64,000 bases of DNA, taken from positions 124,001 through 188,000 of IMG/VR virus record IMGVR_UViG_3300033141_006329, one strand, 5' to 3'. Below, one piece after another: positions 18,831-60,250 of this stretch. The translations under genes and the position numbers were made by a program. Position 1 is the first letter of the stretch. Every line of letters starts with the position of its first letter. The notes under the pieces were generated by a model that searched no databases, had not been told where the DNA came from, and saw only the letters and a program-made list of their open reading frames with translations.

Positions 18831-18956
18831 TTAAAATTATACTTTAAAACCTACCATTCTTTAACCTTCTTATTTTTAACATTCATCACACCTCTCTTAA
18901 ATTTGTCCACACCATCATGTGGGATTTTATCCACTCAAAGCAATTTCCTCCTTATA

Positions 18957-19310: not shown

Positions 19311-19322
19311 AAAAATATCTCC

Positions 19323-19757
19323 TTATAATTCAGCTCCTTCCTCAAGTAATATATCAAGTGCATTGTGAACATTTATATGATTGGACGATTGCTCTCGCAC
19401 TAATCCAAAAAGAAGTTCAAAACCATAATGCTCAATATATTTTTCTGCTATTTCCATTAGTACTAAAGAAAATCTATCATCAGAAATTTCAAACCATATT
19501 CCATCAGAACTCCTATTAGAACATTTCCAAATAATTATAGCCCACAAAAATCTTCCAGTACTCATAAATTTATATTTTTTTACAATAATCCAGTTATCCC
19601 CTATATTTTTACTTATACCACCTTTATAAATGTCTCCAATATTTTTATTTATATCATACTTAAATTTTTCATCAAAACATTTTATCACATCATACCCTAA
19701 GAGTGACATCAAATATAGTTCCCAACCAAGTTTTTCATAATCTCCTATATCTACCAT
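19323..19757 (-). CDS. Array family protein (YEKLGW subfamily)
   Basis: DYEKLGW...WFEIS.D.F..VL; ends LDILLEEGAEL. Confidence 0.7.
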   Translation of the reverse strand: MVDIGDYEKLGWELYLMSLLGYDVIKCFDEKFKYDINKNIGDIYKGGISKNIGDNWIIVKKYKFMSTGRFLWAIIIWKCSNRSSDGIWFEISDDRFSLVLMEIAEKYIEHYGFELLFGLVREQSSNHINVHNALDILLEEGAEL

Positions 19758-19759
19758 AA

Positions 19760-20152
19760 TTATAATTCAGCTCCTTCCTCAAGTAATATATCAAGTGTAT
19801 TGTAAACCCTTATACGGTAGGATGATCGTTTTCGCAGTAACTCAAAAAGAAGTTTAAAATTATAAGGTTCAATGTAGTTCTCCATAACATCCACTAGTAC
19901 CAAAGAAAAATCATCATTAGAAACTTCAAACCATATTGTACTAGAATGTTTTCTAATGCGGTCCCAAATAATTATGCCCCAACAATGTTTTCCGGTATCC
20001 CTAAATTTATATTTTCTTATAATAACCCTAAAGTGCTCGGTGTACGCACTTCCTTTTTCAAAATGCCCACCGTAACATTTTTCTAGATCGATTAAATCAT
20101 TAAACGATTTTTTTCTCCAGCCAAGTTTTTCATAATCTCCTAAATTTATCAA
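19760..20152 (-). CDS. Array family protein (YEKLGW subfamily)
   Basis: Close paralogue of 19323..19757 with identical 38-bp 3' end. Confidence 0.7.
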   Translation of the reverse strand: MINLGDYEKLGWRKKSFNDLIDLEKCYGGHFEKGSAYTEHFRVIIRKYKFRDTGKHCWGIIIWDRIRKHSSTIWFEVSNDDFSLVLVDVMENYIEPYNFKLLFELLRKRSSYRIRVYNTLDILLEEGAEL

Positions 20153-20200
20153 AACTACCCCCTTCCTCAGTTCACAGTAGGATTAAATATCCTTTATGAT

Positions 20201-20515
20201 TTACATAATTTGCCCTTCATCTACCACACTTATCAATAATTCATCCTCATTTGTAGTTACCTCCCCTAGATTTAATATAACATCTATCATACTAGGACCA
20301 TATCGATTTATAGCTTCTGATATAATTATTTTCAATTCTTCTCTAAAGGATGATGTAGTATACAAACGAGTAGTTCCATCATAATAATGATTTAAAATAC
20401 CCCAAAAACCTTCATTATAAAATGTATGAAACAACTCTCTAAAGTCATTATGATATTCATCTAAATTGTCCCAACAATTCTCCCTAAAATTATGCACAGT
20501 AATCCATTTATTCAT
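20201..20515 (-). CDS. Array family protein
   Basis: Paralogue of 24562..24894 (LDEY....ELFHTFY, SFREELKII). Confidence 0.65.
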   Translation of the reverse strand: MNKWITVHNFRENCWDNLDEYHNDFRELFHTFYNEGFWGILNHYYDGTTRLYTTSSFREELKIIISEAINRYGPSMIDVILNLGEVTTNEDELLISVVDEGQIM

Positions 20516-20901
20516 AAGATAATCCCTTCCTCAAGTAATATATTAAGAGCATCGAGAGTAGTTACATGAGGGCTTATATTATAATCATTGTCCATTGGGA
20601 TATTTCGTATTGTATGCACAAGAGATTTGAAACCATAAATATCAATATAGCTTTCCACTAATTCCAGTAGTACTAAAGCAAAATTATCTTTTGATATTTT
20701 AAACCATACGGCATCATTATTTTTTGTAACATTAGTTATAACTATACCCCAACAAATATTATACTCAGGTCCATATCGAAAGCCCCATTTTCTTACAGTA
20801 ATTTTTCTATCATTGTTAAATTTTTTCACTGTATCAACATACGATGAATAATCATTATATACAGCAACCCAGCCTAAATTCTTATAATCTCCTATATTCA
20901 T
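20512..20901 (-). CDS. Array family protein (YEKLGW subfamily)
   Basis: MNIGDYKNLGW; ends LNILLEEGIIL. Confidence 0.7.
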   Translation of the reverse strand: MNIGDYKNLGWVAVYNDYSSYVDTVKKFNNDRKITVRKWGFRYGPEYNICWGIVITNVTKNNDAVWFKISKDNFALVLLELVESYIDIYGFKSLVHTIRNIPMDNDYNISPHVTTLDALNILLEEGIIL

Positions 20902-20921
20902 AAAAACTATCCTTCCATAAT

Positions 20922-21164
20922 TTACCCATCCAAATCTGCATCCAGGTAATCGCCAACCCACCCAATTATAAATACAAGAACAATTGCAAATACCGTAAAG
21001 AAAATACGGTTTGTCATCAGATCCTGAATCATATATCTTTCATAACCACTCTCTACCATATATACAAAGCGACTATAATGCCAAGGAACCCACCAACATA
21101 ATAACCCTATATCTACAAACAATGCTCCCAACTTCCCCTTATGTCTATTTAGAAATTTTATCAT
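20922..21164 (-). CDS. Small membrane protein
   Basis: Two hydrophobic segments. Confidence 0.5.
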   Translation of the reverse strand: MIKFLNRHKGKLGALFVDIGLLCWWVPWHYSRFVYMVESGYERYMIQDLMTNRIFFTVFAIVLVFIIGWVGDYLDADLDG

Positions 21165-21499
21165 TAGTTTTCCTCCAATATTTCATACCAACCACACACC
21201 TCAGCTCTTTCTTGAGCCACAGTTTGTGACATGTCCTCTAACTCCTCATTTGTTATACTATCATCAATCTCAACATCTTCATATTCTTTTTGGTGACCTC
21301 TCCAAGAATACCAATATCTTACTTTCATCTTAATTATCTCCTTACATATGTCCAAGTGCGTAAAATATCCCTGACAATACTGTGGCAATCAAAGCAATAA
21401 ACAACCCATCAATATCCTGTGTCCCTATAGAAGCAATAGCTCCACACATCAAACACCCTATATTTAACATTACCCAATTATTCATTATTTTTCCTCCAG

Positions 21500-21961
21500 T
21501 TAAATAATCATACCACTCAAATCTCCCAATAACATATCAATATCCAGCCTCATAATATTATCGTCGCAACCTATAATATCAGAAACACAATCAGCATTCT
21601 CCATCTTCCTATCTATATAATTCATGATGTCATTTCCTAGTTTTTCCTTCAACGGGAAATGAGAAAGGGTTAATATGTTATCTAAAAATATATTAATCAT
21701 AGCATAAGAGGAGGAGTGATAATAGATACCATTCCTATGTATACAGATATGTACCCCACCTCCTTTTCGTCTTTCTTCTTCTAAAAAGAATATACCCACG
21801 CCGTAGATATTTATAGTGATATACCAATGTTGTGAGATACAAGCTTCCCACACACCAACACGGATATTTTTCCACTCTAATTTATCACGCCGTTTCCTAT
21901 GTACAAATTCATTATCCATAAATTTTCCATCCCTAACTACAGGGAATTCCATCTTCTTCAT
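21500..21961 (-). CDS. Array family protein
   Basis: Ends LDIDMLLGDLSGMII. Confidence 0.55.
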   Translation of the reverse strand: MKKMEFPVVRDGKFMDNEFVHRKRRDKLEWKNIRVGVWEACISQHWYITINIYGVGIFFLEEERRKGGGVHICIHRNGIYYHSSSYAMINIFLDNILTLSHFPLKEKLGNDIMNYIDRKMENADCVSDIIGCDDNIMRLDIDMLLGDLSGMII

Positions 21962-22254
21962 GATTTATTTTCCTTATAGTAATTCTCGATTCTTCTTTTC
22001 TCATCTCTTTCTTTTTCCTCTTCCAAAAATACCTTATCAATAACAGCATCTATACCCTTCTCGATTATACTTCTGACCATTTCGCTATCCTGTCCTTCTA
22101 TTTCTATTATAGACTGTTCTCTTAAAGTTGCCAGCCATCTTTTTCTTTCTTCATATGCACCTGCATCCCAAGCGTCCTGCGCTATTGCCTCTGATCCTCG
22201 AAATCTCCAAGTTAAATTACCTATCCATTTATTCCACCATTCTTTAAATTTCAT
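21958..22254 (-). CDS. Hypothetical protein (not array family)
   Basis: FKEWW...AQDAWDAG; coupled ORF. Confidence 0.55.
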   Translation of the reverse strand: MKFKEWWNKWIGNLTWRFRGSEAIAQDAWDAGAYEERKRWLATLREQSIIEIEGQDSEMVRSIIEKGIDAVIDKVFLEEEKERDEKRRIENYYKENKS

Positions 22255-22619
22255 AATTCTACCCCTCCCTCAATCATAGAGTCCAGAAAGTTATCTTCTA
22301 TCATCTTATGTATAAACTTGAATATGTTTTTTGTTGGTATAAGGTAGATATTATAATCATCTCCTTCAATATATAAAACTCTGTTTAACATATCCAAACA
22401 TTGGACCAAAGCTTCACTGAGTGGAGTATATTCTGGAGAACAACCATTTGTCAATTGGTCAAATAAACCTTCAACTGTTCCAATTATATGATCCTCAATT
22501 TCCTTCACGTGTCCATCTTCAACATAATATTCAATCTCCACCTTAATAATTTCGTTCGCAAGCAATAGAGGTATCAATTCTTCAAAGTCTAATCCTTCAA
22601 CATTAACTATTGTTGGCAT
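22251..22619 (-). CDS. Hypothetical protein with array-type tail
   Basis: Ends FLDSMIEGGVEL. Confidence 0.55.
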   Translation of the reverse strand: MPTIVNVEGLDFEELIPLLLANEIIKVEIEYYVEDGHVKEIEDHIIGTVEGLFDQLTNGCSPEYTPLSEALVQCLDMLNRVLYIEGDDYNIYLIPTKNIFKFIHKMIEDNFLDSMIEGGVEL

Positions 22620-22685
22620 ATTATCTCCTTTTCTTTTTTGAAAACATCACCTGAAAAGTCAAACCAACCTAACGTTCTGTATTTT

Positions 22686-23054
22686 TCAAGATTCATAACC
22701 AACTCCTTGTTCATTATACATACTAAAGATATATTCCACATCGCACCTACTTATAAGAAATTTCTCACTTGCTATATCATAATGTTTTAATATTTTTAAG
22801 AGTGCGTTGAACCCTTTGTTTCTTATAACATGATCTGCTATTTTCATTAATTCCAATCTAAATTCATTACTAAAAATATCAAACCATATTGCTCTACCTT
22901 GGCATGTATGTGATTTCTCGCCTACAATTCCTATATATTTTTGAAGAGCAGATTTTCTTATCCACATCCAATCAGTTGTTGTGCGAAATGATAAATCTTC
23001 AAAACCACATTGTTCCCAACCCCTCATTCTATATTTTTCAAAGTCCACAACCAA
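22686..23054 (-). CDS. Array family protein (FEKY..GW subfamily)
   Basis: DFEKYRMRGW...AIWFDIF. Confidence 0.65.
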   Translation of the reverse strand: MVVDFEKYRMRGWEQCGFEDLSFRTTTDWMWIRKSALQKYIGIVGEKSHTCQGRAIWFDIFSNEFRLELMKIADHVIRNKGFNALLKILKHYDIASEKFLISRCDVEYIFSMYNEQGVGYES

Positions 23055-23427
23055 ACCCCCCCCACATTATATTGATTAATAGATCAATATTAATATCGAC
23101 ATTGTTATACCTTTGCATATAATGATCTAGTATATCTGTAACCATTTTTATATTTCCTCTCTTCTCAGACTCTTCGATAATATCTAATAAAACCAAACCA
23201 AACTTATCAGTTCCAATATCAAACCACATGGAACCAGTTGTCGGCCCATCACTTTTCCCGCTAAGAATACCCCATTCCGGAATGTTGTTCAATTTAAATT
23301 TTCGCAGTAGTATCCAATGATTACCAATTACTTTTATCGCATTTATCCTCTGAGATGCTGTTTTGAAATTACTTAGAGCCCAGCCTTTCTTAGCATACTG
23401 TTCAGATATTATATCCTCTAAATCCAT
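23038..23427 (-). CDS. Array family protein
   Basis: YAKKGW...HWI...WGI...WFDI. Confidence 0.65.
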   Translation of the reverse strand: MDLEDIISEQYAKKGWALSNFKTASQRINAIKVIGNHWILLRKFKLNNIPEWGILSGKSDGPTTGSMWFDIGTDKFGLVLLDIIEESEKRGNIKMVTDILDHYMQRYNNVDINIDLLINIMWGGFGCGL

Positions 23428-23822
23428 ATCGTACCCTCCTCTAAAATTATATCACATACTTTTTCTGCACATACTTTGATAGGATTTGTTGGTATACATC
23501 CTTCTTGTTTGGGATTTTTATTGCGATTCCATATTAAACCTACAACCTCTGAAGTATTATTCTTCTGTTCAGCATCATCTACTATATCCATCAGGATATG
23601 AGGAAAGTCATTATTACTCATATCAAACCATATTGCATTACCATTATACTCGTCGTATAATGGACCTACAATGATGCCCCAATTTGGTATATTTCTTACA
23701 ACAAACCAATGATGACCAGTTTCTTTTACCATATCTAGATTATCAGGATTATATTCTTCAGGGTCATCTTCATTAAGTTTGTTTATTTCCCACCCCTTTT
23801 TCTCATATTTTTCAAAGTTCAT
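23418..23822 (-). CDS. Array family protein (FEKY..GW subfamily)
   Basis: MNFEKYEKKGW; ends IILEEGTIWI. Confidence 0.7.
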   Translation of the reverse strand: MNFEKYEKKGWEINKLNEDDPEEYNPDNLDMVKETGHHWFVVRNIPNWGIIVGPLYDEYNGNAIWFDMSNNDFPHILMDIVDDAEQKNNTSEVVGLIWNRNKNPKQEGCIPTNPIKVCAEKVCDIILEEGTIWI

Positions 23823-24204
23823 TGCAACCCCCTTCAAATATTATATTGATTGTTTTGTTTAGGTCACTATTTATATTGCAAACCTTTATATTATAAGTCT
23901 TTTTATTATAATGAGTTTGAATATAATCTATTAGTGTTTTAATATCTTTAACATTGTAATCAACAACAATATTAAATAAAACTGAAATAAAATCCTCTGT
24001 TAATATATTAAACCATATTGTGACAGTAGTATCCTCTTTAATTTTTCCAATAATAATACCATATTTATAATGTCCATCTAATCTTCCATTTAATTTTCTT
24101 GCAATAACCCAATGCTCTCCAATTATGGTTGATATGTCTATACTATTAATAAACTTATTTTTGCACCCATCCCAACCCTTCTCAATGTATTTTTCAAAGT
24201 TCAT
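23812..24204 (-). CDS. Array family protein (FEKY..GW subfamily)
   Basis: MNFEKYIEKGW; ends IIFEGGCNEL. Confidence 0.7.
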   Translation of the reverse strand: MNFEKYIEKGWDGCKNKFINSIDISTIIGEHWVIARKLNGRLDGHYKYGIIIGKIKEDTTVTIWFNILTEDFISVLFNIVVDYNVKDIKTLIDYIQTHYNKKTYNIKVCNINSDLNKTINIIFEGGCNEL

Positions 24205-24565
24205 AACCATCTCCTTCGAATATTAGATCACACAATTCATCTGTATTTATATCGATACAATGAAGAGAACTACTCATAGAAACTAAGTCTATCAGCCCCC
24301 TAAGAGTATTTTCTTCCTCATGATCTATAATTATATCCAACAAAACAGTGAGGAAATTTTCAGAAGAAATCTTAAACCATATCGATCTTCCAGATCCTAC
24401 ACCTGTCCTACCTATAATTATACCACACTCATCTCCAGTACTAATTCCCCATATCTTTCTTACAATAACCCAATGACTTTCAATTGTTTTTGATATGGTT
24501 ACTGTATTACTGGTAATGTAATCCCGACTGTTCCACCCTAATTTCTCATATTTTTCAAAGTTCAT
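24194..24565 (-). CDS. Array family protein (FEKY..GW subfamily)
   Basis: MNFEKYEKLGW; ends LIFEGDGYEL. Confidence 0.7.
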   Translation of the reverse strand: MNFEKYEKLGWNSRDYITSNTVTISKTIESHWVIVRKIWGISTGDECGIIIGRTGVGSGRSIWFKISSENFLTVLLDIIIDHEEENTLRGLIDLVSMSSSLHCIDINTDELCDLIFEGDGYEL

Positions 24566-24894
24566 AATTGATAACCTCCTTCTAATATCCTCATAAGAGT
24601 ATCATCAATATCTAATTCTATAAATAACTCACATCCAGATAAAAATTCTATGGGGAAATCGTCTAGTTTTTCCACCATTTCAGATAAAATTATCTTTAGT
24701 TCTTCTCTGAATGATAATGGTGCTACTATACATAAATTACCACTATAATTATAATCCTTTACACCCCAGCATAATTTGGTTTTCCACCTACTATAAAATG
24801 TGTGAAACAATTCTTTATGATCCTTATAATATTCATCTAAATTTCTACAGTTTCCACAATAATCATTTATTTTCATCCACCCATTCATTTTCAC
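24562..24894 (-). CDS. Array family protein
   Basis: Ends LDIDDTLMRILEGGYQL. Confidence 0.65.
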   Translation of the reverse strand: MKMNGWMKINDYCGNCRNLDEYYKDHKELFHTFYSRWKTKLCWGVKDYNYSGNLCIVAPLSFREELKIILSEMVEKLDDFPIEFLSGCELFIELDIDDTLMRILEGGYQL

Positions 24895-24897
24895 CTC

Positions 24898-25263
24898 CTA
24901 TAGATTTATTCCTTTATTATATGACTCCACACAAAATCTATCTATATCAAAATTGATATAATTATAAAAATATTTTCCAGATGATATGAAATCGCACCCT
25001 GACAATTGTATAGGATTATTAATGATATTGTATAACTTATGTAATACTCCTTTATCAACATAATCTTGAACTAACCTCTTTAAAACCTTTTCAAAATTCA
25101 AACCATATCCATCAAACACAATAGAAGGAGATAGTGGATTCCAATTCCCCTTACATATAGATATATCCCAATATTCAAAATGAGATGCCCAACAAATACG
25201 AATCCCATATTCCTTGTAATTTGTTTCATGCCACAAATATCTAGTATTTGTCCAGACTAACAA
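24898..25263 (-). CDS. Array family protein
   Basis: W.I.I...IVFD....F..VL core. Confidence 0.6.
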   Translation of the reverse strand: MLVWTNTRYLWHETNYKEYGIRICWASHFEYWDISICKGNWNPLSPSIVFDGYGLNFEKVLKRLVQDYVDKGVLHKLYNIINNPIQLSGCDFISSGKYFYNYINFDIDRFCVESYNKGINL

Positions 25264-25604
25264 TTTGCACCCCCCTCCAATATAATATCCAATGTATCTC
25301 GCATGCTCATCCTAGTGTAACCATAATCGTCATGTAGGTTCACATAGTGAATCCGGTTCAGTAATTCGGCACACCCAAATCTCTCGATATAATCACTTAA
25401 TACATCAAGTAAAATATATTTGAGTTTGTTACCAGTATCCATAAAAATCATAGCTTCCCCACCCATAGATATTTTTCCAATAGATAATATCCAACCATTC
25501 CAACAAGAAGCTTTGGAAATACATATCCAATATTCATCTTTTTTGATATGAGTCCCTGCATAATCCGTAATCCAAGTTAATCCTATATCCTCATTTGATA
25601 TCAT
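25257..25604 (-). CDS. Array family protein
   Basis: Ends LDIILEGGANC. Confidence 0.6.
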   Translation of the reverse strand: MISNEDIGLTWITDYAGTHIKKDEYWICISKASCWNGWILSIGKISMGGEAMIFMDTGNKLKYILLDVLSDYIERFGCAELLNRIHYVNLHDDYGYTRMSMRDTLDIILEGGANC

Positions 25605-25999
25605 AATATTAATCCTCCCATATCGAACATACTATTTAGTATATCTTCCTCAGCCTCAATATTAATATATTGCGCATTGTTGGAGTTGAGATCGCTAATC
25701 ATCTCAAAAAGCTCTTCGAGCTGATTATTTGTTATACACTTGTCCACGATATTCATGAGAGTATCAAAAAAGTTTTTACAACACAACATGAAAGTTATAG
25801 TATTGGTGGAGTTGGTCTGCCACTGATCTTTATATAATGTTAATCTCCAAGCGTCCTTTCCCATATACCATCCAATCTGCATAATATATCTTCCGTGTAT
25901 TTTGTTATAATTCCCTGCACACTCATTCCAACGATCTGTCATATTTCTTATCACTTCTTCGCCCAAATTCTTAAATAAACCCTTCTTTCGAATAATCAT
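25601..25999 (-). CDS. Array family protein
   Basis: Ends ILNSMFDMGGLIL. Confidence 0.6.
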   Translation of the reverse strand: MIIRKKGLFKNLGEEVIRNMTDRWNECAGNYNKIHGRYIMQIGWYMGKDAWRLTLYKDQWQTNSTNTITFMLCCKNFFDTLMNIVDKCITNNQLEELFEMISDLNSNNAQYINIEAEEDILNSMFDMGGLIL

Positions 26000-26220
26000 A
26001 ATATTAATCCTCCCGCAGTAAGTAAATCTAATAGATCCTCAATATGAATACCTATGAAATGTGTTCCACCATTCTTTACGAATTCCGTTCTTTTAGTACG
26101 ATCCGAATTCAATATATCTTTAATCTTTTCTGAGTTTTCAGGTGTAGTTGTCATATCAAAATGCAATGTAGTACCACCATAAAAAACGAAGGTCATATCT
26201 TTAACCCATTTTTTAAACAT
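25996..26220 (-). CDS. Short array family protein
   Basis: Ends IEDLLDLLTAGGLIL. Confidence 0.55.
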   Translation of the reverse strand: MFKKWVKDMTFVFYGGTTLHFDMTTTPENSEKIKDILNSDRTKRTEFVKNGGTHFIGIHIEDLLDLLTAGGLIL

Positions 26221-26539: not shown

Positions 26540-26541
26540 GT

Positions 26542-27350: not shown

Positions 27351-27487
27351 AATTTCTCCTCAATAAATCTCACCTTTATTATTAATCAACTGTATCATTG
27401 TCTCTAATTTATATGGAAAATCTACCATATCCTTTCGTGCTAAACCGTCCCAAATTCTATTTTCTTCTTTCCTCCATTCTTTTTCGG

Positions 27488-27823: not shown

Positions 27824-28151
27824 AACGACATCCCTCCTCCATAAATTTCATCAATAAATCATTGTCATATATTTTCACATTCACTGTTTTATTAATACTT
27901 TTCCGCACTACATATTTAAAAAATTCGACACTCTGACTTATATTCGATTTGGTAATAACTGATTTTAAACACTCTCTAAATAATAATGAAGTGGTATAAA
28001 ATTTAATAACACCTCTTCCAGAACCCGAAAGGATCCAATAATAAGTACCTTGATATATACGTAGTTGATCCCGGCCATTTATCCTAAATGTATCCGTAGT
28101 ATAATAACTTTTGGGAGGACCTTCTTTTTCCTCATTCCAACCATCTATCAT
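27804..28151 (-). CDS. Array family protein (Y.TTD subfamily)
   Basis: Ends LLMKFMEEGCRYEQPVD. Confidence 0.65.
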   Translation of the reverse strand: MIDGWNEEKEGPPKSYYTTDTFRINGRDQLRIYQGTYYWILSGSGRGVIKFYTTSLLFRECLKSVITKSNISQSVEFFKYVVRKSINKTVNVKIYDNDLLMKFMEEGCRYEQPVD

Positions 28152-28461
28152 CTCCTACTCCTTTCACTAATAATATTTCTAATATATCGTCTTTTACTTC
28201 TATATATTTACAAGACTCATCATTCACAATAGGTTCAATTCCGCACTTATTAAAAAATTCAGATAATACTGTTTTTATAACAACTTTTATCTTAGGTGAA
28301 AATATTTTAAATACAAGAATACAATAATTATTGTGTGGAGTTACAACATTCCAACCATCATTATCTGGAAAGAGATTAAATTGTTTTACATCATCCTTAT
28401 AATATCGATCCGTTGTATTATAAGAACAAATAGTATTAGTAATAGATTTCCAACCTGTCAT
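28132..28461 (-). CDS. Array family protein (Y.TTD subfamily)
   Basis: GW......SYNTTD; ILEILLVKG tail. Confidence 0.65.
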   Translation of the reverse strand: MTGWKSITNTICSYNTTDRYYKDDVKQFNLFPDNDGWNVVTPHNNYCILVFKIFSPKIKVVIKTVLSEFFNKCGIEPIVNDESCKYIEVKDDILEILLVKGVGDDRWLE

Positions 28462-28781
28462 AATTCTTCTCCCTCATTTATAATTGTGATTAGTATATCT
28501 AGTTCCAATTTTATACTTGGATAACTATTCATAAACAGATATAGGCTGTCTAATCCATGTTTTTCAATATATTCTGATATAATTGTTTTTATCACTTCTC
28601 TAAAAGATAATAGACCAGTATAAAATTTAATATTGCCTAAGTTTATATGTTTTGATAACAACCAACGATATTCGGTAACATATAGGTATAGAAAATATTT
28701 TTCACCGATCCAATATTTATCACAAGCCGTGTATCTAAAAACTTTATCTGTTAATTCGAGCCAACCGTTGCTATAACTCAT
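28458..28781 (-). CDS. Array family protein
   Basis: Ends LDILITIINEGEEL. Confidence 0.65.
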   Translation of the reverse strand: MSYSNGWLELTDKVFRYTACDKYWIGEKYFLYLYVTEYRWLLSKHINLGNIKFYTGLLSFREVIKTIISEYIEKHGLDSLYLFMNSYPSIKLELDILITIINEGEEL

Positions 28782-29094
28782 ATCCTTTCTCCATCAAACT
28801 GTTTATATTCTCATCGATATTGATTTTCACAACAATTTTATGCAGATTTCTCATCATCATTGTTACACCTTTAAAATCATGAAAAATTTGATCCCCTATA
28901 GCATCACGTATTTCATACTTAAAATCTATGGATGATTTGGGAGGAATCTTGAACCAGAAAAGATTTATAATACAACCGCCTCCTCTAAATACTTCACGTA
29001 GGCTCACACACCAGTAAACATAATCAACCGCAGAGATAGATAGGGTGTGGTCGCCATAATTAAAGCGTATACCATTCTCACATTTTTTCCACAT
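28771..29094 (-). CDS. Array family protein
   Basis: MWKK..NG; paralogue of 30207..30554 (E.RD.IG.QI..DF). Confidence 0.65.
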   Translation of the reverse strand: MWKKCENGIRFNYGDHTLSISAVDYVYWCVSLREVFRGGGCIINLFWFKIPPKSSIDFKYEIRDAIGDQIFHDFKGVTMMMRNLHKIVVKINIDENINSLMEKGYEL

Positions 29095-29455
29095 ATTGCG
29101 CCCCTTCCTCTGACATATTATAAAATAAAGATTCCACACTCATGTCGATATTAATAATAATACCATTGGGATTATGTGTTTTTACAATATTTAACATTTT
29201 TGCACGGAATGTTTCGACTGATTTTGATTTCAAATTCTCATATATAATATCCAACAAAATAGGAATAAAATCATCATTTATATTTTTGAATATAATAGCA
29301 ACGCCACTATAATCTTCGTATCCAATAGCTATTCCCCAACCAGATCCTAATCCATACCTGATTGCTATCCAATATGCCCCTACTCTTGTGCCCATCCCAG
29401 TATGCCCATATTCTACAGACCAGCCTTCCCTTACATAACACGAAATATCATTCAT
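29078..29455 (-). CDS. Array family protein
   Basis: GWGIA.GY.D..G.AIIF shared with 30555..30917. Confidence 0.65.
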   Translation of the reverse strand: MNDISCYVREGWSVEYGHTGMGTRVGAYWIAIRYGLGSGWGIAIGYEDYSGVAIIFKNINDDFIPILLDIIYENLKSKSVETFRAKMLNIVKTHNPNGIIINIDMSVESLFYNMSEEGAQYVEKM

Positions 29456-29844
29456 GTCCTTCTTTCCCTCCCCAATAAAATGTTTCCAATGTATCCTCCA
29501 ATCTCACAGCAATAAAATCTTTATTATTTTTTATAAAGTTATAAAATTTATCATAATTTTTTTCAATAGCCTTCTCAACAATAAGTATTATTTCGCCAGG
29601 AAATTTATCATCTGAAATTTCAAAATCAATACCACCAATAAAAGTGTTACCATTGTCTAATTTCAAACGAAGGGATCCATCAGAATTACTTTCCTCCCAA
29701 AAATCTAAAAAAATACCACCCATCCGTCCACATGATGCAATAATTATTCCCCTCATAAACAAGATCATCACCCTCAGCAGGGCTCATCTGCGCTTTTCCT
29801 TCCTTTATATGAGCATAATATTCATACATCTCATTTGAGTCCAT
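29448..29844 (-). pseudogene. Array family gene apparently split by a frameshift in a T7 run
   Basis: Removing one base from 29707-29713 joins MDSNEMY...DGWY to LDFWEE...FYWGG in one 131-aa ORF. Confidence 0.45.
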
Positions 29845-30220
29845 AACAACCTCCCTCAAAAAATTCTTGTATAACCAAATCAAATACATCATATTTGTAA
29901 TCATAAGATGTATAAGGAGCAATTGTCTCATATAAATCCTCTACAGATCCAGACCTTAAAAATTCTGTCATTAGATCCAATAATATATACATGAAATCAT
30001 AATCATTTGTATTAAATACGATATATTTGCAACCAAAAGCGAATTCAGATCCTCGTATAGTCCTCTTAATATTTGATGTCATTATAGCAATCTTGGTGGG
30101 ACCAAAACTATTGACATCATACATGACCCCTATAGTATATGGATTTTTTTCATAAAAGAATCTTTCTCCATGATCCTTAACGGACCAACCAAAATCAATA
30201 TAATGTTTAACATTGTTCAT
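29831..30220 (-). CDS. Array family protein
   Basis: HYIDFGW; ends IQEFFEGGCYGLK. Confidence 0.65.
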   Translation of the reverse strand: MNNVKHYIDFGWSVKDHGERFFYEKNPYTIGVMYDVNSFGPTKIAIMTSNIKRTIRGSEFAFGCKYIVFNTNDYDFMYILLDLMTEFLRSGSVEDLYETIAPYTSYDYKYDVFDLVIQEFFEGGCYGLK

Positions 30221-30554
30221 ATGACCCTCCCTTCAATAACTCATTCAAACAATTATAGATATCAACATGTATAACCTCATTATAATTATCCTTCATAATA
30301 TCTAGAACACTTTCAAAATCCTGATAAATCTGTTTCCCTATAATATCTCGTAATTCGCATTGAAAAGAATTAGTCATATAAGAAGGCATTACAAATTTTA
30401 TATAAACCATCATCGAGCAACTACCCCTACTATACCAATGCCGATGTTCCAGATATACGCTCTCTTTATATCTATCTTTTTCATATGTTTGCGATATGAC
30501 TATCTCATCTTTATCATATGCGAACCACATGCCATTATAGAATTTTTCCCACAT
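30207..30554 (-). CDS. Array family protein
   Basis: Ends LNELLKGGSYEQC. Confidence 0.65.
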   Translation of the reverse strand: MWEKFYNGMWFAYDKDEIVISQTYEKDRYKESVYLEHRHWYSRGSCSMMVYIKFVMPSYMTNSFQCELRDIIGKQIYQDFESVLDIMKDNYNEVIHVDIYNCLNELLKGGSYEQC

Positions 30555-30917
30555 TTATCTTCCCCTCTCTAATATATCAAAAAGAAATTTATCTATATCA
30601 ATTTTTATATAAACAGTACTACCTATACAAAGATCATTTAGAACTATATCTATCAATGTGGATTCTAACTTATGTAGTGTATTTGTCTGTATATATTGTT
30701 CTACAATATCCAATAATAGAGGAATGAAATCAGTACCAACTTTCTCAAATATTATAGCAAGTCCTTTACAGTCTGTATATCCCATAGCAATTCCCCAGCC
30801 ACAACAATTAACTCCACATATCACAGCCACCCATATATCATCAATATTTTTATACATACCCACCCCATGCCTACTATCAAATATCCAATCATTTCTGCGA
30901 TATTGTTCTAGATTCAC
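30555..30917 (-). CDS. Array family protein
   Basis: Ends IDIDKFLFDILERGR. Confidence 0.65.
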   Translation of the reverse strand: MNLEQYRRNDWIFDSRHGVGMYKNIDDIWVAVICGVNCCGWGIAMGYTDCKGLAIIFEKVGTDFIPLLLDIVEQYIQTNTLHKLESTLIDIVLNDLCIGSTVYIKIDIDKFLFDILERGR

Positions 30918-31216
30918 AATTCACCTCCCTCAGCCATAAAATTCAAAATACTTTCATCGTCCATAAACAGACCACCACCATCATAATTCATAATATTGTT
31001 GATATTCAAATTCACATCATCTATAGCCTTGCGTAAAATATTTTCAAGTATATACATAAAATCATTGTGATATTCTTCATTCATAAGAAAAACAAAACGT
31101 ACTAAAAACGTAATACCATCAGATATATCCAAACCAGGATAATAACCAGTGAAACAATTCCTCAATCCTATATTTATCTGATATTTTTTATAAGGTGTAT
31201 ATATGTTACTAATCAT
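30914..31216 (-). CDS. Array family protein (YPG subfamily)
   Basis: YPG..I.DGI, M.EEYH..FM.IL and MDDESILN shared with next ORF. Confidence 0.7.
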   Translation of the reverse strand: MISNIYTPYKKYQINIGLRNCFTGYYPGLDISDGITFLVRFVFLMNEEYHNDFMYILENILRKAIDDVNLNINNIMNYDGGGLFMDDESILNFMAEGGEL

Positions 31217-31560
31217 TATAATTTCTCCCAATATCCTTCACTCATTATACAATTTAAAATACTTTCATCATCCATCCACATTTTACACAACTCTTTACTA
31301 TTCATCTCATGGATCAAAATCTTCATATTAATATCTATAGAATTAATAGCTTTTTGTAGAGTTGAATTGAGTATATCCATAAATTCAGGATGATATTCCT
31401 CATCCATATAGAAGACAGGAGTAGCTATAATTTCAATACCATCATCTATATACATTCCAGGATATTCAGGACCAGCACAATCTTTCATACATATGTGTAT
31501 ATTGTATTTGCCATATTTTTTACTTTCGTATTTTTCTATCTCATATTCGTACGATCTCAT
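31216..31560 (-). CDS. Array family protein (YPG subfamily)
   Basis: Tandem paralogue of 30914..31216. Confidence 0.7.
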   Translation of the reverse strand: MRSYEYEIEKYESKKYGKYNIHICMKDCAGPEYPGMYIDDGIEIIATPVFYMDEEYHPEFMDILNSTLQKAINSIDINMKILIHEMNSKELCKMWMDDESILNCIMSEGYWEKL

Positions 31561-32308
31561 TATAATCCTCCTTCTTAGGATACCAATTCCATATAGCTTC
31601 TTCTCCCGATCTCTCAGGCAGATATATACCATCCCTTTTATCCAGCCTAACATATTTACATAAAAAATCAACTACCCATCTTCTATCACCTCTCTTATTT
31701 ATTACCTTATTCCGTTCAACTCGCCATACGGCCCCCTCCACCTCATCAATGGCTCCATGGAATCCATACTTACCTAATCTTACCATTATATCAGCCACAG
31801 ATATAGCCCCACCAACATGAAGGATATGAGGAGTTATGAAATCGAATTGTCCTACTCTTGATTTTAAATCATTAAAAAGAATGCGCTTATAATTGGAAAA
31901 TAAATCAAATGTAACAAATGGTTCATGCGTTAGATTATATCTTGTACTATGAGCTTGTGCTAACCACTCTCCGCAAATCCTCTCATCATTATTAAGAAGC
32001 TCATCAAAGCGAGTTCTATTCCTCTCAACCCAATCAGCAAAAAATCGATGTTGTTTATAATCAGAGCTAACGGCTAAATAACCTGCTCTTATGAGAGGGT
32101 ATATTATTCCATCCTTTTTTGCTACACCGACATTTGTTCCGTCCAATTTTTCCAGGACAGTTATTAAATCATGTTCGTCTCTGGTCTTTTTTATAGCTAT
32201 ATTTCCTTGTCTCTCAGGACAATGATGATCACCGTATCCTGTTCTACTGTTGGGTAGATGCGGAATGTGACCATAACATTTAATTCCTAACGGTTTTTTA
32301 GGTCTCAT
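31541..32308 (-). CDS. ATP-dependent RNA ligase family protein
   Basis: Nucleotidyltransferase motifs EKLDGTN, ICGEW, FVTFD, EGAVWR, CKYVR. Confidence 0.8.
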   Translation of the reverse strand: MRPKKPLGIKCYGHIPHLPNSRTGYGDHHCPERQGNIAIKKTRDEHDLITVLEKLDGTNVGVAKKDGIIYPLIRAGYLAVSSDYKQHRFFADWVERNRTRFDELLNNDERICGEWLAQAHSTRYNLTHEPFVTFDLFSNYKRILFNDLKSRVGQFDFITPHILHVGGAISVADIMVRLGKYGFHGAIDEVEGAVWRVERNKVINKRGDRRWVVDFLCKYVRLDKRDGIYLPERSGEEAIWNWYPKKEDYNEIVRI

Positions 32309-32600
32309 ATTGTTTCCCTTCATACATAAAATCAATATCATGATATTCAAAGTAACTATATTTTTCCAATACATTTAAAAATCCACTCTTATCACCCACA
32401 TCAACCAGAGCCTCAATAAATTCTTCCGCCTCCTTAACATCAAAGTTTTTTAACATACCAATGTGTGTTTCGGTCGTTTCTCTCATATCATGATATATAA
32501 TATAACAACCAGGATGATTACATAAAATAACAGATAATTCCGAATTCTCCTGACACGATACCTTATCTTCCCAATGACTATTGATAATATTTGAGTTCAT
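32298..32600 (-). CDS. Array family protein (PGC...LKNFD subfamily)
   Basis: Ends LEKYSYFEYHDIDFMYEG. Confidence 0.7.
   Translation of the reverse strand: MNSNIINSHWEDKVSCQENSELSVILCNHPGCYIIYHDMRETTETHIGMLKNFDVKEAEEFIEALVDVGDKSGFLNVLEKYSYFEYHDIDFMYEGKQYET
32317..32366. repeat. 50-bp repeat, copy 1 of 3 (others 32610-32659, 33919-33968)
   Basis: CCTTCATACATAAAATCAATATCATGATATTCRAAGTAACTATATTTTTC. Confidence 0.9.
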
Positions 32601-33094
32601 AATTCAACTCCTTCATACATAAAATCAATATCATGATATTCGAAGTAACTATATTTTTCCAATATATATTGAAATCCTCCTCTACTGCACCCATTGATTA
32701 ATATCGTGATAAATTCTTCCGCTTCCTCAACATCAAAGTTTTTAAGTATACAAATATGTCTTTTCCCTGAGTATAAAATATAATGAGTCAATAACCAGCA
32801 ACCAGGATATTTGTTCAAGAAGACAGATAATTCTTTGTTCTCACAATACATTTTGTGAGTTTTCCAACTACCAAATCCTACCGCTTTCATAATAACTTCC
32901 CCCTCATTCATAATAATCTCAAATAACTTCTCATAATCAATATTCACAGAATGCATTTGATAATTAGTATTATTAAAATCATCTCGTTCTATAGTGAACA
33001 TCATCTTTACTGCACCACTACCGACTTTCCAATTTCGAATAACCATATCAAATCTCCCTTCAATAATATCATTAACTAATGTAACATTACACAA
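32597..33094 (-). CDS. Array family protein, apparent in-frame fusion of modules
   Basis: Internal tails DIIEGRFD and IIMNEGEVI precede a PGC...LKNFD module. Confidence 0.6.
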   Translation of the reverse strand: MCNVTLVNDIIEGRFDMVIRNWKVGSGAVKMMFTIERDDFNNTNYQMHSVNIDYEKLFEIIMNEGEVIMKAVGFGSWKTHKMYCENKELSVFLNKYPGCWLLTHYILYSGKRHICILKNFDVEEAEEFITILINGCSRGGFQYILEKYSYFEYHDIDFMYEGVEL

Positions 33095-33476
33095 GTTGAT
33101 ATCCCTTCCCCGAAAACCCTTCTAATAACTCATAGATTTTTATCCTTACTGTATGTGGTGATACAGGATGGTGATCATATATTAGGTTGTCAGTTTCGTA
33201 AGGTTTTAAAGTCTGTTCAGACATTAGAAATATAAGATGCTCGTTAAAAGCTTTGTATTTTTTATCCGATAACAATATATCAAATACCAATACCTTACGA
33301 GGGAGGGTATTATGATTAGTATAAAATCTAATTGTTGGAAATGTGTTATTAACCATCATCCAAATCTCATAATATAAATCCTGTAATACATAAGCACCTA
33401 TAGGGCAATATTTCCATGTTACACCATTAATATTAATACTCTTCTCACAGTTATCAGATCCCGATCGATTAATCAT
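33087..33476 (-). CDS. Array family protein
   Basis: INGVTW; ends IYELLEGFSGKGYQLV. Confidence 0.6.
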   Translation of the reverse strand: MINRSGSDNCEKSININGVTWKYCPIGAYVLQDLYYEIWMMVNNTFPTIRFYTNHNTLPRKVLVFDILLSDKKYKAFNEHLIFLMSEQTLKPYETDNLIYDHHPVSPHTVRIKIYELLEGFSGKGYQLV

Positions 33477-33909
33477 ACTGACATCCTCCCTTATAAAAAA
33501 TATCAAAAAGAATATGTAGAGAAGTATGTGCATTATATACTTTTCTGACCCCAGTAAAATCAAAACGATCTATAGGAAATCTATCAATATGCACTAATGC
33601 ACTTCGGCCTATTTCCAATATTTCCCCATGAAACTTGTCATTAATTGGTTTGAATAATATGGACAATATTGTAGTTCTTGGAGATGGCTCATCTTGATTA
33701 TAACCCCATTTTCTTGTAGGATTTACCTTAGAGATATCCAACATCGATATGAATATATACACTATATGTGGTCTGCATACAATACCTGCCTCTAATGTGT
33801 AACCATTGTATTTTCTCTGATATCTGCCAGAAGTTTTGTTCCATTTTATCTCACCCTCTTTTAAGGTCAGATAAGAATAATCAAATATATCAACATACAA
33901 ACTTTTCAT
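33469..33909 (-). CDS. Array family protein
   Basis: Ends ILFDIFYKGGCQYD. Confidence 0.6.
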   Translation of the reverse strand: MKSLYVDIFDYSYLTLKEGEIKWNKTSGRYQRKYNGYTLEAGIVCRPHIVYIFISMLDISKVNPTRKWGYNQDEPSPRTTILSILFKPINDKFHGEILEIGRSALVHIDRFPIDRFDFTGVRKVYNAHTSLHILFDIFYKGGCQYD

Positions 33910-34880
33910 AATTCAACTCCTTCATACATAAAATCAATATCATGATATTCAAAGTAACTATATTTTTCTAGTGTGCGCATGAATTGTTGTTCACCACCGA
34001 CTGCAAACAATGCTACAACGAAATCCTTTGCTGTTCTGATGTCAAAGTTTTTTAACACAGCAATATTTAAAAGAGATGTTGAACTTAGTCGCTTGGTATA
34101 TGTCAACTCAAAACAGCCAGGATATTTGTATAAATTAATAGATAATACGCGATGGTCGTAACTCGTGCAATTATCATACCACTCATCGCCAAATGCCGTG
34201 CCCCCGACACTCTTAAGCTTTTGAAGTTTACCTTCCTTAGTCAAAGATAATAATTTGGCAAATGTATTTACATCGTACCGACCATTAAACGTTTCTATAT
34301 TTTTTAATTTCGAAAGAGGTTCATAAGGAATATCTAATCTCTTATTGAAATCAACACTAAGATATTCTAAATTTTCTAACTTGCCTAGAGTATTCACAGA
34401 AGTTGCCGCACCACCATACAAATAAAGATGTTTTAACGACCTAAGATTTTTTAAGAAAGACATATCCATAATCTCACCGTTATTTAAAGATAAATATAGC
34501 GATTGTAATTGATTCAATTTCCCAATGTGCGACACACAACCAGAACAATTTGTAATTTTCAAAAAAGTCAGATTTGGAAGTAAAGATAAGAAAGGTTTAT
34601 CCCCTAAATCGAAATTTCTCATGGTGAGAGATTTTAAATTACTTAAAGTATTTATATTACTGAGATCCCATTTATCAATGCAATAATTTGCCCCTGATAT
34701 ACTCAATTCTGTCAGAGATTTAAAATATGGTAATATATTCGATAAATCTCTATTATTGCATAATCCAATGCTATCTATATGTTTCAAATGAATAGGTAGG
34801 ATGGTTCCATTTTTTGATAACCCGTTCTTTTTTCTTATCAACCTTCTTGCACTAAGTCCTTCAATGTTTAAACTCTTCAC
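33906..34880 (-). CDS. Leucine-rich repeat protein fused to array-family module
   Basis: LxxLxxLxL repeats, then YPGC...LKNFD...YHDIDFMYEGVEL. Confidence 0.8.
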   Translation of the reverse strand: MKSLNIEGLSARRLIRKKNGLSKNGTILPIHLKHIDSIGLCNNRDLSNILPYFKSLTELSISGANYCIDKWDLSNINTLSNLKSLTMRNFDLGDKPFLSLLPNLTFLKITNCSGCVSHIGKLNQLQSLYLSLNNGEIMDMSFLKNLRSLKHLYLYGGAATSVNTLGKLENLEYLSVDFNKRLDIPYEPLSKLKNIETFNGRYDVNTFAKLLSLTKEGKLQKLKSVGGTAFGDEWYDNCTSYDHRVLSINLYKYPGCFELTYTKRLSSTSLLNIAVLKNFDIRTAKDFVVALFAVGGEQQFMRTLEKYSYFEYHDIDFMYEGVEL

Positions 34881-59933: not shown

Positions 59934-59945
59934 TTTTCCTTTACC

Positions 59946-60242: not shown

Positions 60243-60250
60243 AGTGCCCC

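What the first reader, a model, noticed from the sequence alone, without database searches (positions are those of the whole stretch)
19323..33968. Identical short DNA repeats sit at gene junctions of the array
Seen: 38 bp at 19323-19360 = 19760-19797 (19 bp also at 20525-20543); 23 bp at 23800-23822 = 24543-24565 (17 bp at 24188-24204); 20 bp at 25600-25619 = 25995-26014; 50 bp at 32317, 32610 and 33919 with one mismatch. Gene bodies between these are far more divergent. Each repeat covers a tail/SD/stop region or a start. Inference: junctions act as recombination handles, so genes duplicate, drop out or swap while keeping translational coupling, like an integrase-free cassette array.
Basis: partly seen in the sequence, partly recalled or inferred. 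Interest (0 to 1): 0.65.

Follow-up and report, generated by a model that had tools for sequence, protein, structure and literature searches.

The report
Cassette-like small-gene array in a jumbo phage

Summary
Every repeat is exact at the stated coordinates, and the array has 140 shared 17-mer pairs against 0.15 expected.

The window lies in a 223-kb jumbo myovirus record. The region 18957-35565 (minus strand) holds 46 small genes. In 32 of 45 junctions the stop overlaps the next start. Nearly every gene ends in a hydrophobic-x-x-hydrophobic-hydrophobic-E-[E/G]-G tail whose codons are the next gene's Shine-Dalgarno site. About 70 such genes in three arrays form unannotated families found only in this phage and one close relative.

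The repeats are the coding heads and tails of paralogues, not intergenic elements. In two to three families they are identical even at synonymous sites while the gene bodies are saturated, which points to gene conversion.

A relative phage (capsid protein 98.7% identical) differs in this array by about ten insertion/deletion events. Eight have both breakpoints within about 30 nt of a start codon. One cassette (g44) is flanked by a 16/18 direct repeat that is single and chimeric in the relative. Two events are not junction-to-junction (one mid-gene and out of frame, one within a single gene).

So the "recombination handle" idea is partly supported. There is no dedicated site, and selection alone could produce much of the bias.

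The parts
18957..35565 (-). Array 1. It holds 46 small genes (43-324 aa; named g01 at the low coordinate to g46 at the high one), all on the minus strand. 32 of 45 junctions overlap, and 13 of those are ATGA. 43 of 45 starts are preceded by an SD core, mostly inside the upstream gene's last codons.
   Evidence: The gene calls of the identical JGI contig agree.
19323..19360 (-). A 38-bp exact repeat formed by the last 12 codons plus the stop of g02 (..LDILLEEGAEL*). It is identical to the g03 tail at 19760-19797, and 19 bp of it occur in the g05 tail at 20525-20543.
   Evidence: The synonymous difference in the last 20 codons is 0.08, against 0.41 in the body.
19760..19797 (-). The second copy of the 38-bp tail repeat, in the g03 tail.
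23799..23822 (-). A 24-bp head repeat (ATGAACTTTGAAAAATATGAGAAA, MNFEKYEK) at the start of g14. It is identical to the g16 head at 24542-24565, and 17-19 bp of it form the g15 head at 24188-24206.
   Evidence: The first 10 codons of g14/g16 have 8/8 synonymous codons identical, against 14/23 in the body.
24188..24206 (-). The g15 head copy of the repeat. The crossover that removes g15-g12 in the relative phage lies inside it.
   Evidence: (joint 22652/24188).
24542..24565 (-). The g16 head copy of the 24-bp repeat.
25600..25619 (-). A 20-bp exact repeat (GGGAGGATTAATATTATGAT) spanning tail GGLIL*, SD, ATGA and the next codon at the g20|g19 junction. The same 20 bp at 25995-26014 form the g21|g20 junction, so g20 is flanked by perfect direct repeats although g20 and g21 are barely alike.
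25995..26014 (-). The second copy of the 20-bp junction repeat (g21|g20).
32317..32366 (-). A 50-bp repeat in the g40 tail (codons for EKYSYFEYHDIDFMYEG).
32596..32664 (-). The g41 tail copy. It is 69 bp long with one mismatch to the g44 copy, and it runs through the stop and into the first 5 nt of g40.
33905..33973 (-). The g44 tail copy. It runs through the stop and into the first 5 nt of g43.
   Evidence: For g41/g44 the synonymous difference is 0.12 in the last 20 codons and 0.76 in the body (Fisher p = 0.0002).
33906..34880 (-). g44, made of leucine-rich repeats plus a g40-like C-terminal domain. The whole cassette is absent from the relative. In the window it is flanked by a 16/18 direct repeat TTGAATTrTGAArAGTTT (34869-34905 and 33895-33931) that is single and chimeric in the relative.
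31541..32308 (-). g39, an RNA ligase (PF09414). It is the only array gene with a known family and it is under strong purifying selection (dN/dS 0.10).
32597..33046 (-). g41, a fusion of a 54-aa gene (free-standing in the relative) with a g40-like domain. The joint lies exactly at the former SD/ATG.
22607..22696 (-). A 29-aa remnant consisting of the head (MNLEKYRTLGW) plus the last codons of a family gene whose body is deleted here. The gene is present in the relative.
35620..35701 (-). Two terminator-like hairpins between the NAD-dependent DNA ligase gene and the first array gene.
18906..18923 (.). A hairpin (CCCACATGATGGTGTGG) just after the last array gene. It is conserved at the array end in the relative.
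59344..64000 (-). The start of array 2, which continues to genome position 194803. Its small genes have the same C-terminal tail/SD motif.

Best explanation
**What it is.** The repeats are the coding heads and tails of tandem paralogues in a long, translationally coupled array of small genes without database relatives, in a jumbo myovirus.

**Why the tails look alike.** The tail of nearly every gene follows one pattern. An amphipathic last helix ends in E-[E/G]-G, and a few disordered residues follow. The codons GAR-GGA-GG form the ribosome-binding site of the next gene, and the stop overlaps the next ATG. This double duty keeps all tails similar. Common descent makes the heads and tails of close paralogues longer matches.

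**How it evolves.** On top of that, paralogues exchange their ends. In the g40/g41/g44 and g02/g03 groups a short tract next to the junction has been homogenised recently by gene conversion or unequal crossing-over. The array as a whole evolves by birth and death of whole genes, through homologous or microhomology-mediated recombination between heads or tails. The phage's own RecA/UvsX-like recombination or replication slippage probably does this, not a site-specific enzyme. Selection then keeps the products that preserve reading frames and coupling.

**Shown.**
- The repeats and the coupled anatomy.
- The local loss of synonymous divergence.
- The gene-content differences and their breakpoints.
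- The restriction of the families to this lineage.

**Inferred.**
- That the repeats raise the recombination rate, rather than merely marking where products survive.
- That the proteins are fast-evolving host-interaction factors, such as small inhibitors.
For: **Anatomy.**
- 46 genes lie on one strand; 32 of 45 junctions overlap and 43 of 45 have an SD core.
- The junction consensus is GGAGG at -14 to -8 plus ATGA.
- In the AlphaFold model of g16 (pLDDT 83.8) the last helix spans residues 108-117 and residues 120-123 are disordered, so the SD-coding residues sit at the helix end.

**Paralogy.**
- 28 of 46 genes are linked by BLASTP.
- The genome has 53 members of superfamily A plus two further families of 5 and 12, in three arrays.

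**Local homogenisation.**
- Synonymous difference, body versus last 20 codons: 0.76 vs 0.12 (g41/g44), 0.70 vs 0.19 (g40/g44), 0.41 vs 0.08 (g02/g03). Fisher p = 0.0002, 0.006 and 0.03.
- The identity boundary is sharp.
- Two distant copies in array 2 encode the same EIDFMYEGVE motif with different codons, so codon constraint does not explain the identity.

**Turnover against the relative** (L001, L030, L031; capsid gene 95% nt, protein 98.7% aa).
- g44, g41C+g40, g35-38, g30, g24, g15-12 and g10-01 are absent from it, and it has one extra gene. Breakpoints lie in the tail/SD/ATG/first codons.
- It has a hybrid g31/g30 tail and a hybrid g24/g23 head.
- The g44 site is a single chimeric junction.
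- One crossover lies inside the 24188-24204 head repeat.

**Other support.**
- Array genes have dN/dS of 0.26-0.90, against 0.10 for the RNA ligase.
- A RecA-like gene is present and no integrase or resolvase was found.
Against: - Only one relative, in three short contigs from one metagenome run, was available, so the direction of each event (gain or loss) and event rates are unknown.
- Most breakpoints share only SD/ATGA microhomology, which is what selection for intact coupled genes would leave behind even if breaks were random.
- Two events are not junction-to-junction.
- Three paralogue pairs (g37/38, g15/16, g22/23) show no synonymous contrast at their tails.
- The function of the proteins is entirely unknown. 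There are no Pfam, PHROG, PDB or Atlas matches.
- The window and the 306-kb JGI contig are identical and may be the same assembly, so the array structure has no independent confirmation by reads.
Confidence: 0.65

Rival explanations
1. Constraint and survivorship only. The repeats are simply the best-conserved parts of paralogous proteins (an N-terminal Y..GW head and a C-terminal helix) plus the embedded SD. Rearrangements happen anywhere, by illegitimate recombination, and only junction-to-junction products persist. The repeats play no part in making them.
For: - The most conserved columns of the family alignment are W11, F64 and G119, so the ends are conserved at the protein level.
- Across all junctions only GGAGG and ATGA are shared.
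- A mid-gene, out-of-frame deletion exists in the relative, so breaks are not confined to junctions.
- Three paralogue pairs show no synonymous contrast.
Against: - Synonymous sites are identical in the 50-bp, 38-bp and 24-bp tracts while the bodies are saturated.
- The same protein motif is coded differently elsewhere in the genome.
- g20 and g44 are flanked by 20-bp perfect and 16/18 direct repeats although their neighbours are not close paralogues.
- One crossover maps inside a 17-24-bp exact head repeat.
Confidence: 0.25
2. The repeats are functional nucleic-acid elements, as in the promoter/stem-loop cassettes (PeSL) of T4-type phages or the attC sites of integrons. They would be recognised by the transcription machinery or by a site-specific recombinase that moves the cassettes.
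For: The g44 topology matches the published PeSL scheme: two motifs flank the cassette in one genome, and a single chimeric motif stands in the relative (PMC2839356).
Against: - The repeats are coding sequence, and 32 of 45 junctions have no intergenic space.
- Folding of five repeat-bearing stretches gives z-scores from -0.65 to +1.96.
- Promoter-like sites number 132 against 115 +/- 8.5 in shuffles, and none of the listed sites spans a junction (one weak 9/12 match overlaps the g44 copy). No terminator-like site lies at the repeats.
- No tyrosine or serine recombinase is found in the record.
- There is no motif common to all junctions beyond SD and ATGA.
Confidence: 0.04
3. Assembly artefact. 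The array order or its copy number was created by mis-assembly across short repeats in a metagenome.
For: The record is a metagenome assembly. The only identical copy (L002) may be the same assembly.
Against: - The repeats are 17-50 bp, shorter than usual reads and assembly k-mers.
- The reading frames are intact and coupled through 46 genes.
- Independent contigs from another sample are collinear with the window over every gene they share.
Confidence: 0.03

Closest known systems
PeSL-mediated modular shuffling in hyperplastic regions of T4-type phages (Arbiol et al. 2010, PMC2839356; Comeau et al. 2014, PMC4122927)
   Same: - A myovirus region full of small non-essential genes without database relatives differs between close relatives by whole-gene insertions, deletions and replacements.
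- The differing genes are flanked by a repeated motif that includes the SD and the start codon.
- The relative carries a single chimeric motif at the empty site.
- Host-type homologous recombination is invoked, not an integrase.
   Different: - PeSLs are intergenic elements of about 100 bp with a sigma-70 promoter and a terminator stem-loop, so each gene brings its own transcription signals.
- Here there is no intergenic space, no promoter and no hairpin.
- The shared sequence is the coding tail and head plus the SD, the genes are paralogues of each other, and they are read as one long coupled operon.
Tandem multigene families evolving by birth-and-death with gene conversion. Examples from my own knowledge: poxvirus 'genomic accordions' and the MGF360/505 families of African swine fever virus.
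   Same: - Lineage-specific expansion of one protein family in tandem.
- Rapid copy-number change between close relatives.
- Raised dN/dS.
- Local conversion tracts.
   Different: Those arrays have separately transcribed genes. Here the unit boundary coincides with an SD embedded in a conserved C-terminal motif and an overlapping stop/start, so each unit carries the translation start of its neighbour.
Integron gene-cassette arrays
   Same: Promoterless small genes lie in one orientation and are gained and lost as units.
   Different: - No attC-like structured site.
- No integrase.
- Cassettes are paralogous.
- Breakpoints show only homology or microhomology.
Polymorphic internal-protein (IP) loci of T-even phages (Repoila et al. 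1994, recalled from memory; not read here)
   Same: Tandem small genes next to head genes share a conserved 5' coding leader and differ between close phages. The products are anti-host proteins.
   Different: No capsid-targeting leader or protease site has been shown here. In the model the conserved head is part of the fold.

Membership tests
PeSL regulatory cassettes (T4-type phages) | A sigma-70-like early promoter inside the repeated motif | tested here: not met
   The consensus scan found 132 promoter-like sites against 114.8 +/- 8.5 in shuffles. None of the listed sites spans a junction; one weak 9/12 match overlaps the g44 copy of the 50-bp repeat.
PeSL regulatory cassettes (T4-type phages) | A stable stem-loop (terminator/attenuator) in the motif | tested here: not met
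   RNA folds of five repeat-bearing 91-nt stretches give z-scores of -0.65, -0.40, +0.84, +1.96 and -0.04.
PeSL regulatory cassettes (T4-type phages) | An intergenic location | tested here: not met
   32 of 45 junctions overlap, and the repeats lie in coding heads and tails.
PeSL regulatory cassettes (T4-type phages) | Differential genes flanked by two motifs, with a single chimeric motif in the close relative | tested here: met
   The g44 site and the g30 hybrid tail.
PeSL regulatory cassettes (T4-type phages) | Mini-circles formed by exchange between neighbouring motifs | not testable with these tools
   The only public run found is kept as contigs.
Integron cassette array | An integrase (tyrosine recombinase) next to the array | tested here: not met
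   PF00589 and PF00239 give no match in the 223-kb record, which is 71% complete by CheckV.
Integron cassette array | An attC site (imperfect inverted repeat that folds) at each cassette end | tested here: not met
   No folding signal at the junctions. The junction consensus is only SD plus ATGA.
Tandem multigene family with unequal crossing-over and gene conversion | Neighbouring genes are paralogues | tested here: met
   BLASTP links 28 of 46 genes. jackhmmer finds 53 members in the genome.
Tandem multigene family with unequal crossing-over and gene conversion | Copy number and content differ between close relatives, with hybrid genes at the breakpoints | tested here: met
   About ten events against a relative with 98.7% capsid protein identity, including a hybrid tail, a hybrid head and a chimeric junction.
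Tandem multigene family with unequal crossing-over and gene conversion | Conversion tracts: segments with much lower synonymous divergence than the rest of the gene, with sharp borders | tested here: met
   Met for g40/41/44 and g02/03, weaker for g14/16 and g20/21, and absent in g37/38, g15/16 and g22/23.
Translationally coupled operon | Stop/start overlap and an SD inside the upstream coding sequence | tested here: met
Translationally coupled operon | Downstream translation depends on upstream translation | not testable with these tools
   This needs reporter fusions or ribosome profiling.
Known protein families (Pfam, PHROGs, PDB folds) | A significant profile or fold match | tested here: not met
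   - Pfam and PHROGs give nothing for 25 array proteins.
- Foldseek gives no match with E <= 0.001, and the best VIA Z of 5.7 is inside the noise range.
- The Atlas gives no usable hit.

The most novel reading that the evidence does not exclude
The arrays are a built-in diversity generator. Every unit ends in a helix-cap motif that is at once protein tail, ribosome-binding site and recombination substrate. Any unit can therefore be duplicated, deleted, fused or moved next to any other and is expressed immediately, without a promoter or an integrase. The phage's own recombination machinery would thus keep up a rapidly changing repertoire of about 70 small anti-host proteins. This would be a coding-sequence counterpart of PeSL or integron cassettes.
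Probability: 0.25. Interest if true: 0.75.

Novelty: new variant of a known kind. Interest (0 to 1): 0.58.

Why it matters
**Gene turnover in phages.** Hyperplastic regions and orphan genes make up much of phage "dark matter", and how such genes are gained, lost and kept expressed is only partly understood. Here about 70 small genes (roughly a seventh of a jumbo phage genome) belong to families that an exhaustive search of 1.84 billion representative proteins finds only in this phage and one close relative. The array has changed by about ten whole-gene events while the capsid protein changed by 1.3%.

**A simple rule for new genes.** The unit boundary is a coding tail that doubles as the next gene's ribosome-binding site. 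This shows how newly duplicated or inserted genes can be expressed at once inside an operon. It extends the PeSL idea of recombination at conserved regulatory junctions to a case without intergenic DNA.

**A candidate protein family.** The proteins have a confidently predicted fold with no known relative and relaxed or diversifying selection. They are candidates for new host-takeover or anti-defence factors.

Tried and rejected
- **Close DNA relatives in GenBank phages.** None by megablast.
- **Relatives through the NAD ligase in IMG/VR.** None.
- **RNA-ligase homologues.** 27 metagenome loci with 43-60% identity carry none of the array families.
- **Capsid relatives.** Phage records of 182-236 kb with 59-71% capsid identity carry none of the families; the one hit is marginal, E = 0.0025.
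- **Protein family searches.** Pfam and PHROGs give nothing for 25 array proteins.
- **Fold searches.**
  - Foldseek against the PDB gives nothing at E <= 0.001.
  - The wide VIA search gives a best Z of 5.7. Small immunity and inhibitor proteins (TriTu, CdiI, AcrF1, PsiB, T7 Gp1.2) are among the tied top rows, but that is within noise, so I draw no conclusion.
  - The ESM Atlas gives no usable hit.
- **Link between families.** A profile-profile comparison of the g40-like family with superfamily A is not significant (probability 0.4%).
- **RNA structure or promoter in the repeats.** Rejected.
- **Read-level joints or circles.** Only one public run holds related DNA, and it is kept as contigs. 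Read laying could show only a contig-level joint (22652/24188), not molecules.
- **Tail-fibre-like proteins.** Two Mtd_N tail-fibre-like proteins give 8-9 weak repeated matches each to the family profile. Each match is only 1-13 bits, and I treat this as an untested lead, not as homology.

Full report
**1. Context**

The window is positions 124001-188000 of a single 223,370-bp virus record with 33% G+C.
- It encodes a Gp23-type major capsid protein (15822-17282), a portal protein, a tail sheath and an NAD-dependent DNA ligase (35723-37516, minus strand).
- The capsid protein is only 21-24% identical to those of known jumbo phages. A 306-kb JGI contig is 100% identical over the part compared.
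- This is therefore an uncultured jumbo myovirus.

**2. The observation**

- A full list of exact repeats adds a 46-bp match (32596-32641 = 33905-33950) that crosses a stop/start junction.
- The array has 140 pairs of shared 17-mers and a longest repeat of 50 bp. First-order Markov resamples give 0.15 pairs and a longest repeat of 15 bp on average, 19 bp at most.
- All repeats of 18 bp or more lie within about 75 nt of a gene's 3' end or about 32 nt of its 5' end. The single 17-bp exception covers the conserved IWFD motif in mid-gene.

**3. Anatomy**

Between 18957 and 35565 I count 46 genes of 43-324 aa, all on the minus strand. The gene calls on the identical JGI contig agree.
- 32 of 45 junctions overlap, and 13 of these are ATGA. 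43 of 45 starts have an SD core upstream, nearly always inside the last codons of the preceding gene.
- Almost every protein ends in a tail such as ..LDILLEEGAEL..MIEGGVEL..FMEEGYNIL or ..DFMYEGVEL.
- Aligned on the start codons, the only conserved positions are GGAGG at -14 to -8 and ATGA.
- The E/G-G of the tail is therefore the ribosome-binding site of the next gene. The last Leu/Ile (NNA TGA) comes from the stop/start overlap.
- Two terminator-like hairpins precede the array and one follows it.

**4. The proteins**

BLASTP links 28 of the 46 proteins into one superfamily, and the closest pairs are only 46-55% identical.
- Iterated searches of the whole record give 53 members of this superfamily: 33 in this array, 11 in a second array at genome 183344-194803, 6 in a third at 219727-223370, and 3 elsewhere. 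There are also a g40-like family of 5 and a third family of 12.
- Pfam and PHROGs recognise only g39 (RNA ligase) and the leucine-rich repeats of g44.
- With the paralogues as alignment, AlphaFold2 gives a confident model of g16 (pLDDT 83.8, pTM 0.74). It has a short helix, a five-stranded sheet, two helices, a strand and a last helix (108-117), followed by a disordered end.
- No solved structure matches above noise.
- An exhaustive profile search of 1.84 billion representative proteins returns 42 hits.
  - 38 are proteins of this phage or its close relative.
  - Two are small proteins at 32-33% identity.
  - Two are Mtd_N tail-fibre-like proteins with many weak repeated matches.
- Phages with 59-71% capsid identity lack the family.

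**5. Is the end identity more than protein conservation?**

I compared codon identity among identical residues in the gene body and in the last 20 codons.
- g41/g44: 17/37 in the body against 18/19 at the end.
- g40/g44: 12/23 against 15/16.
- g02/g03: 33/41 in the body against 21/21 for both ends together. Fisher p = 0.0002, 0.006 and 0.03.
- Nei-Gojobori synonymous differences, body versus last 20 codons, are 0.76 vs 0.12, 0.70 vs 0.19 and 0.41 vs 0.08.
- The alignment shows a sharp border, with 50 identical bases after a poorly conserved stretch.
- Two distant copies in array 2 encode the same EIDFMYEGVE motif with different codons, so neither codon bias nor the protein forces the identity.
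- The repeats contain no RNA structure and no promoter or terminator signal.
- Recent gene conversion or unequal exchange is the simplest reading for these groups.
- Three other pairs (g37/38, g15/16, g22/23) show no such contrast, so this is not a general property of all junctions.

**6. Comparison with a relative**

Three contigs from one marine-sediment run come from a close relative: L001 (3946 bp), L030 (6836 bp) and L031 (2058 bp). Shared array genes are 80-91% identical at the base level, the capsid gene 95%, and the capsid protein 98.7%.

Relative to it, the window differs as follows.

a. **g44 is absent from the relative.** In the window it is flanked by TTGAATTGTGAAGAGTTT and TTGAATTATGAAAAGTTT (16/18 identical). 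The relative has one junction, made of the left part of the first repeat and the right part of the second.

b. **The g40-like half of g41 and all of g40 are absent.** The 54-aa front of g41 is a free-standing gene that directly precedes the RNA ligase, and the breakpoints lie at the SD/ATG.

c. **g35-g38 are absent.** The breakpoints lie at the ligase SD and within the first codons of g34.

d. **The relative has an extra 114-aa family gene** exactly between g33 and g32.

e. **g30 is absent.** The g31 orthologue carries a hybrid g31/g30 tail.

f. **g24 is absent.** A hybrid g24-start/g23-body head stands in its place.

g. **The relative has a 1780-bp deletion** from mid-g23 to mid-g17. It is out of frame and shows only microhomology.

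h. **g15-g12 are absent.** The crossover lies inside the MNFEKY head repeat at 24188-24204.

i. **A family gene present in the relative survives in the window only as a 29-aa remnant** of its head and tail, at 22607-22696.

j. **g10-g01 are absent.** The relative's array ends after g11, at the same terminal hairpin.

Eight of these ten events have both breakpoints within about 30 nt of a start codon. That zone makes up about 17% of the sequence.

**7. Selection on the genes**

Between the two phages the RNA ligase has dN/dS of 0.10, while six array genes have 0.26-0.90. This indicates relaxed or diversifying selection.

**8. Recombination machinery**

The record holds a RecA/UvsX-like gene (64.5 bits) and no tyrosine or serine recombinase. 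The record is estimated to be 71% complete.

**9. Interpretation**

The repeats are coding heads and tails of paralogues. Three things keep them alike: the protein fold, the embedded SD with its overlapping start, and occasional conversion. The array evolves by birth and death of whole units, with breakpoints concentrated at these ends.

Whether the ends promote recombination or merely mark the survivors cannot be settled with one relative and no reads.
- Evidence for some mechanistic role:
  - the chimeric g44 junction;
  - the crossover inside an exact head repeat;
  - the perfect 20-bp and 32-bp repeats that flank single cassettes whose neighbours are dissimilar, g20 and a 93-aa gene in array 2;
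  - the conversion tracts.
- Evidence for a large role of selection:
  - the two events that are not junction-to-junction;
  - the lack of any array-wide motif beyond SD and ATGA.

**10. Comparison with known systems**

The closest described system is PeSL-mediated modular shuffling in T4-type phages (PMC2839356; PMC4122927, listed but not read). The outcome and the empty-site and occupied-site topology are the same. The defining promoter, stem-loop and intergenic position are not met here. Integron features (attC, integrase) are not met either. The array fits a tandem multigene family with unequal crossing-over and conversion. Its unusual feature is that the unit boundary is a coding tail that serves as the next gene's translation start.

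**11. Verdict**

I file it as a new variant of a known kind: a coding-junction, operon-embedded form of cassette turnover in a phage hyperplastic region, in a lineage-restricted family of about 70 genes with an unmatched fold.

Noticed in passing
window 29448-29931 (g33) and L001 1431-1810: g33 is split by a frameshift in the window (ORFs 29686-29931 and 29448-29771 overlap). Its orthologue in the relative is frameshifted at a different place. It is likely a decaying gene in both phages, or there are homopolymer errors.
   Followed up: partly
window 22607-22696: A 29-aa ORF is the head (MNLEKYRTLGW) and last codons of a family gene whose body is deleted. The relative keeps the full gene (L030 979-1295), itself frameshifted in a G-run.
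   Followed up: yes
window 20153-20200: The 48-nt spacer before g03 contains a relic of an LLEEG-type tail/SD (AACTGAGGAAGGGGG). This suggests that g04, from a different subfamily, replaced the body of an earlier paralogue.
   Followed up: partly
window 32597-33046 (g41): g41 is an in-frame fusion of a 54-aa gene, separate in the relative, with a g40-like domain. The fusion comes from one T fewer in a T-run at the former SD/ATG junction.
   Followed up: yes
window 17385-18830: A 481-aa protein with a DUF559 (endonuclease-like) part and a Ros/MucR-like part lies between the capsid gene and the array. In the relative it is replaced by two genes of 614 and 533 aa (the latter DUF7487). This is a second variable spot, possibly a mobile endonuclease gene.
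   Followed up: partly
window 59344-64000, continuing to genome 194803; also genome 219727-223370: Two further arrays of small minus-strand genes have the same tail/SD motif. Array 2 has a 32-bp exact repeat across two consecutive junctions (genome 189986 and 190264) that flanks a 93-aa gene.
   Followed up: partly
window 54535-58621: Three larger minus-strand genes (369, 332 and 336 aa) stand ahead of array 2. The 332-aa one (55641-56639) resembles the leucine-rich-repeat protein g44 (E = 5e-6).
   Followed up: no
proteins P0026 (1622 aa) and P0043 (1783 aa), from the exhaustive search: Two Mtd_N tail-fibre-like proteins from elsewhere give 8-9 weak, evenly spaced matches each to the sheet-plus-helix core of the family profile. 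This is either a remote link to a fibre repeat or a chance match amplified by repetition. The window's own 1758-aa Mtd_N protein (4534-9810) shows no match.
   Followed up: partly
whole record G000: IMG/VR labels the 223-kb record a provirus cut from a 306-kb contig. The gene content (T4-type capsid, sheath, portal, RecA-like gene, no integrase found) looks like a lytic jumbo phage, so the label may be a trimming artefact.
   Followed up: no
orthologue pairs, window vs L001: Synonymous divergence varies four-fold between neighbouring genes: 0.10-0.15 for g29, g32 and g34, against 0.37-0.48 for g31, g27 and the RNA ligase. This suggests mosaic exchange between the two phage lineages.
   Followed up: no
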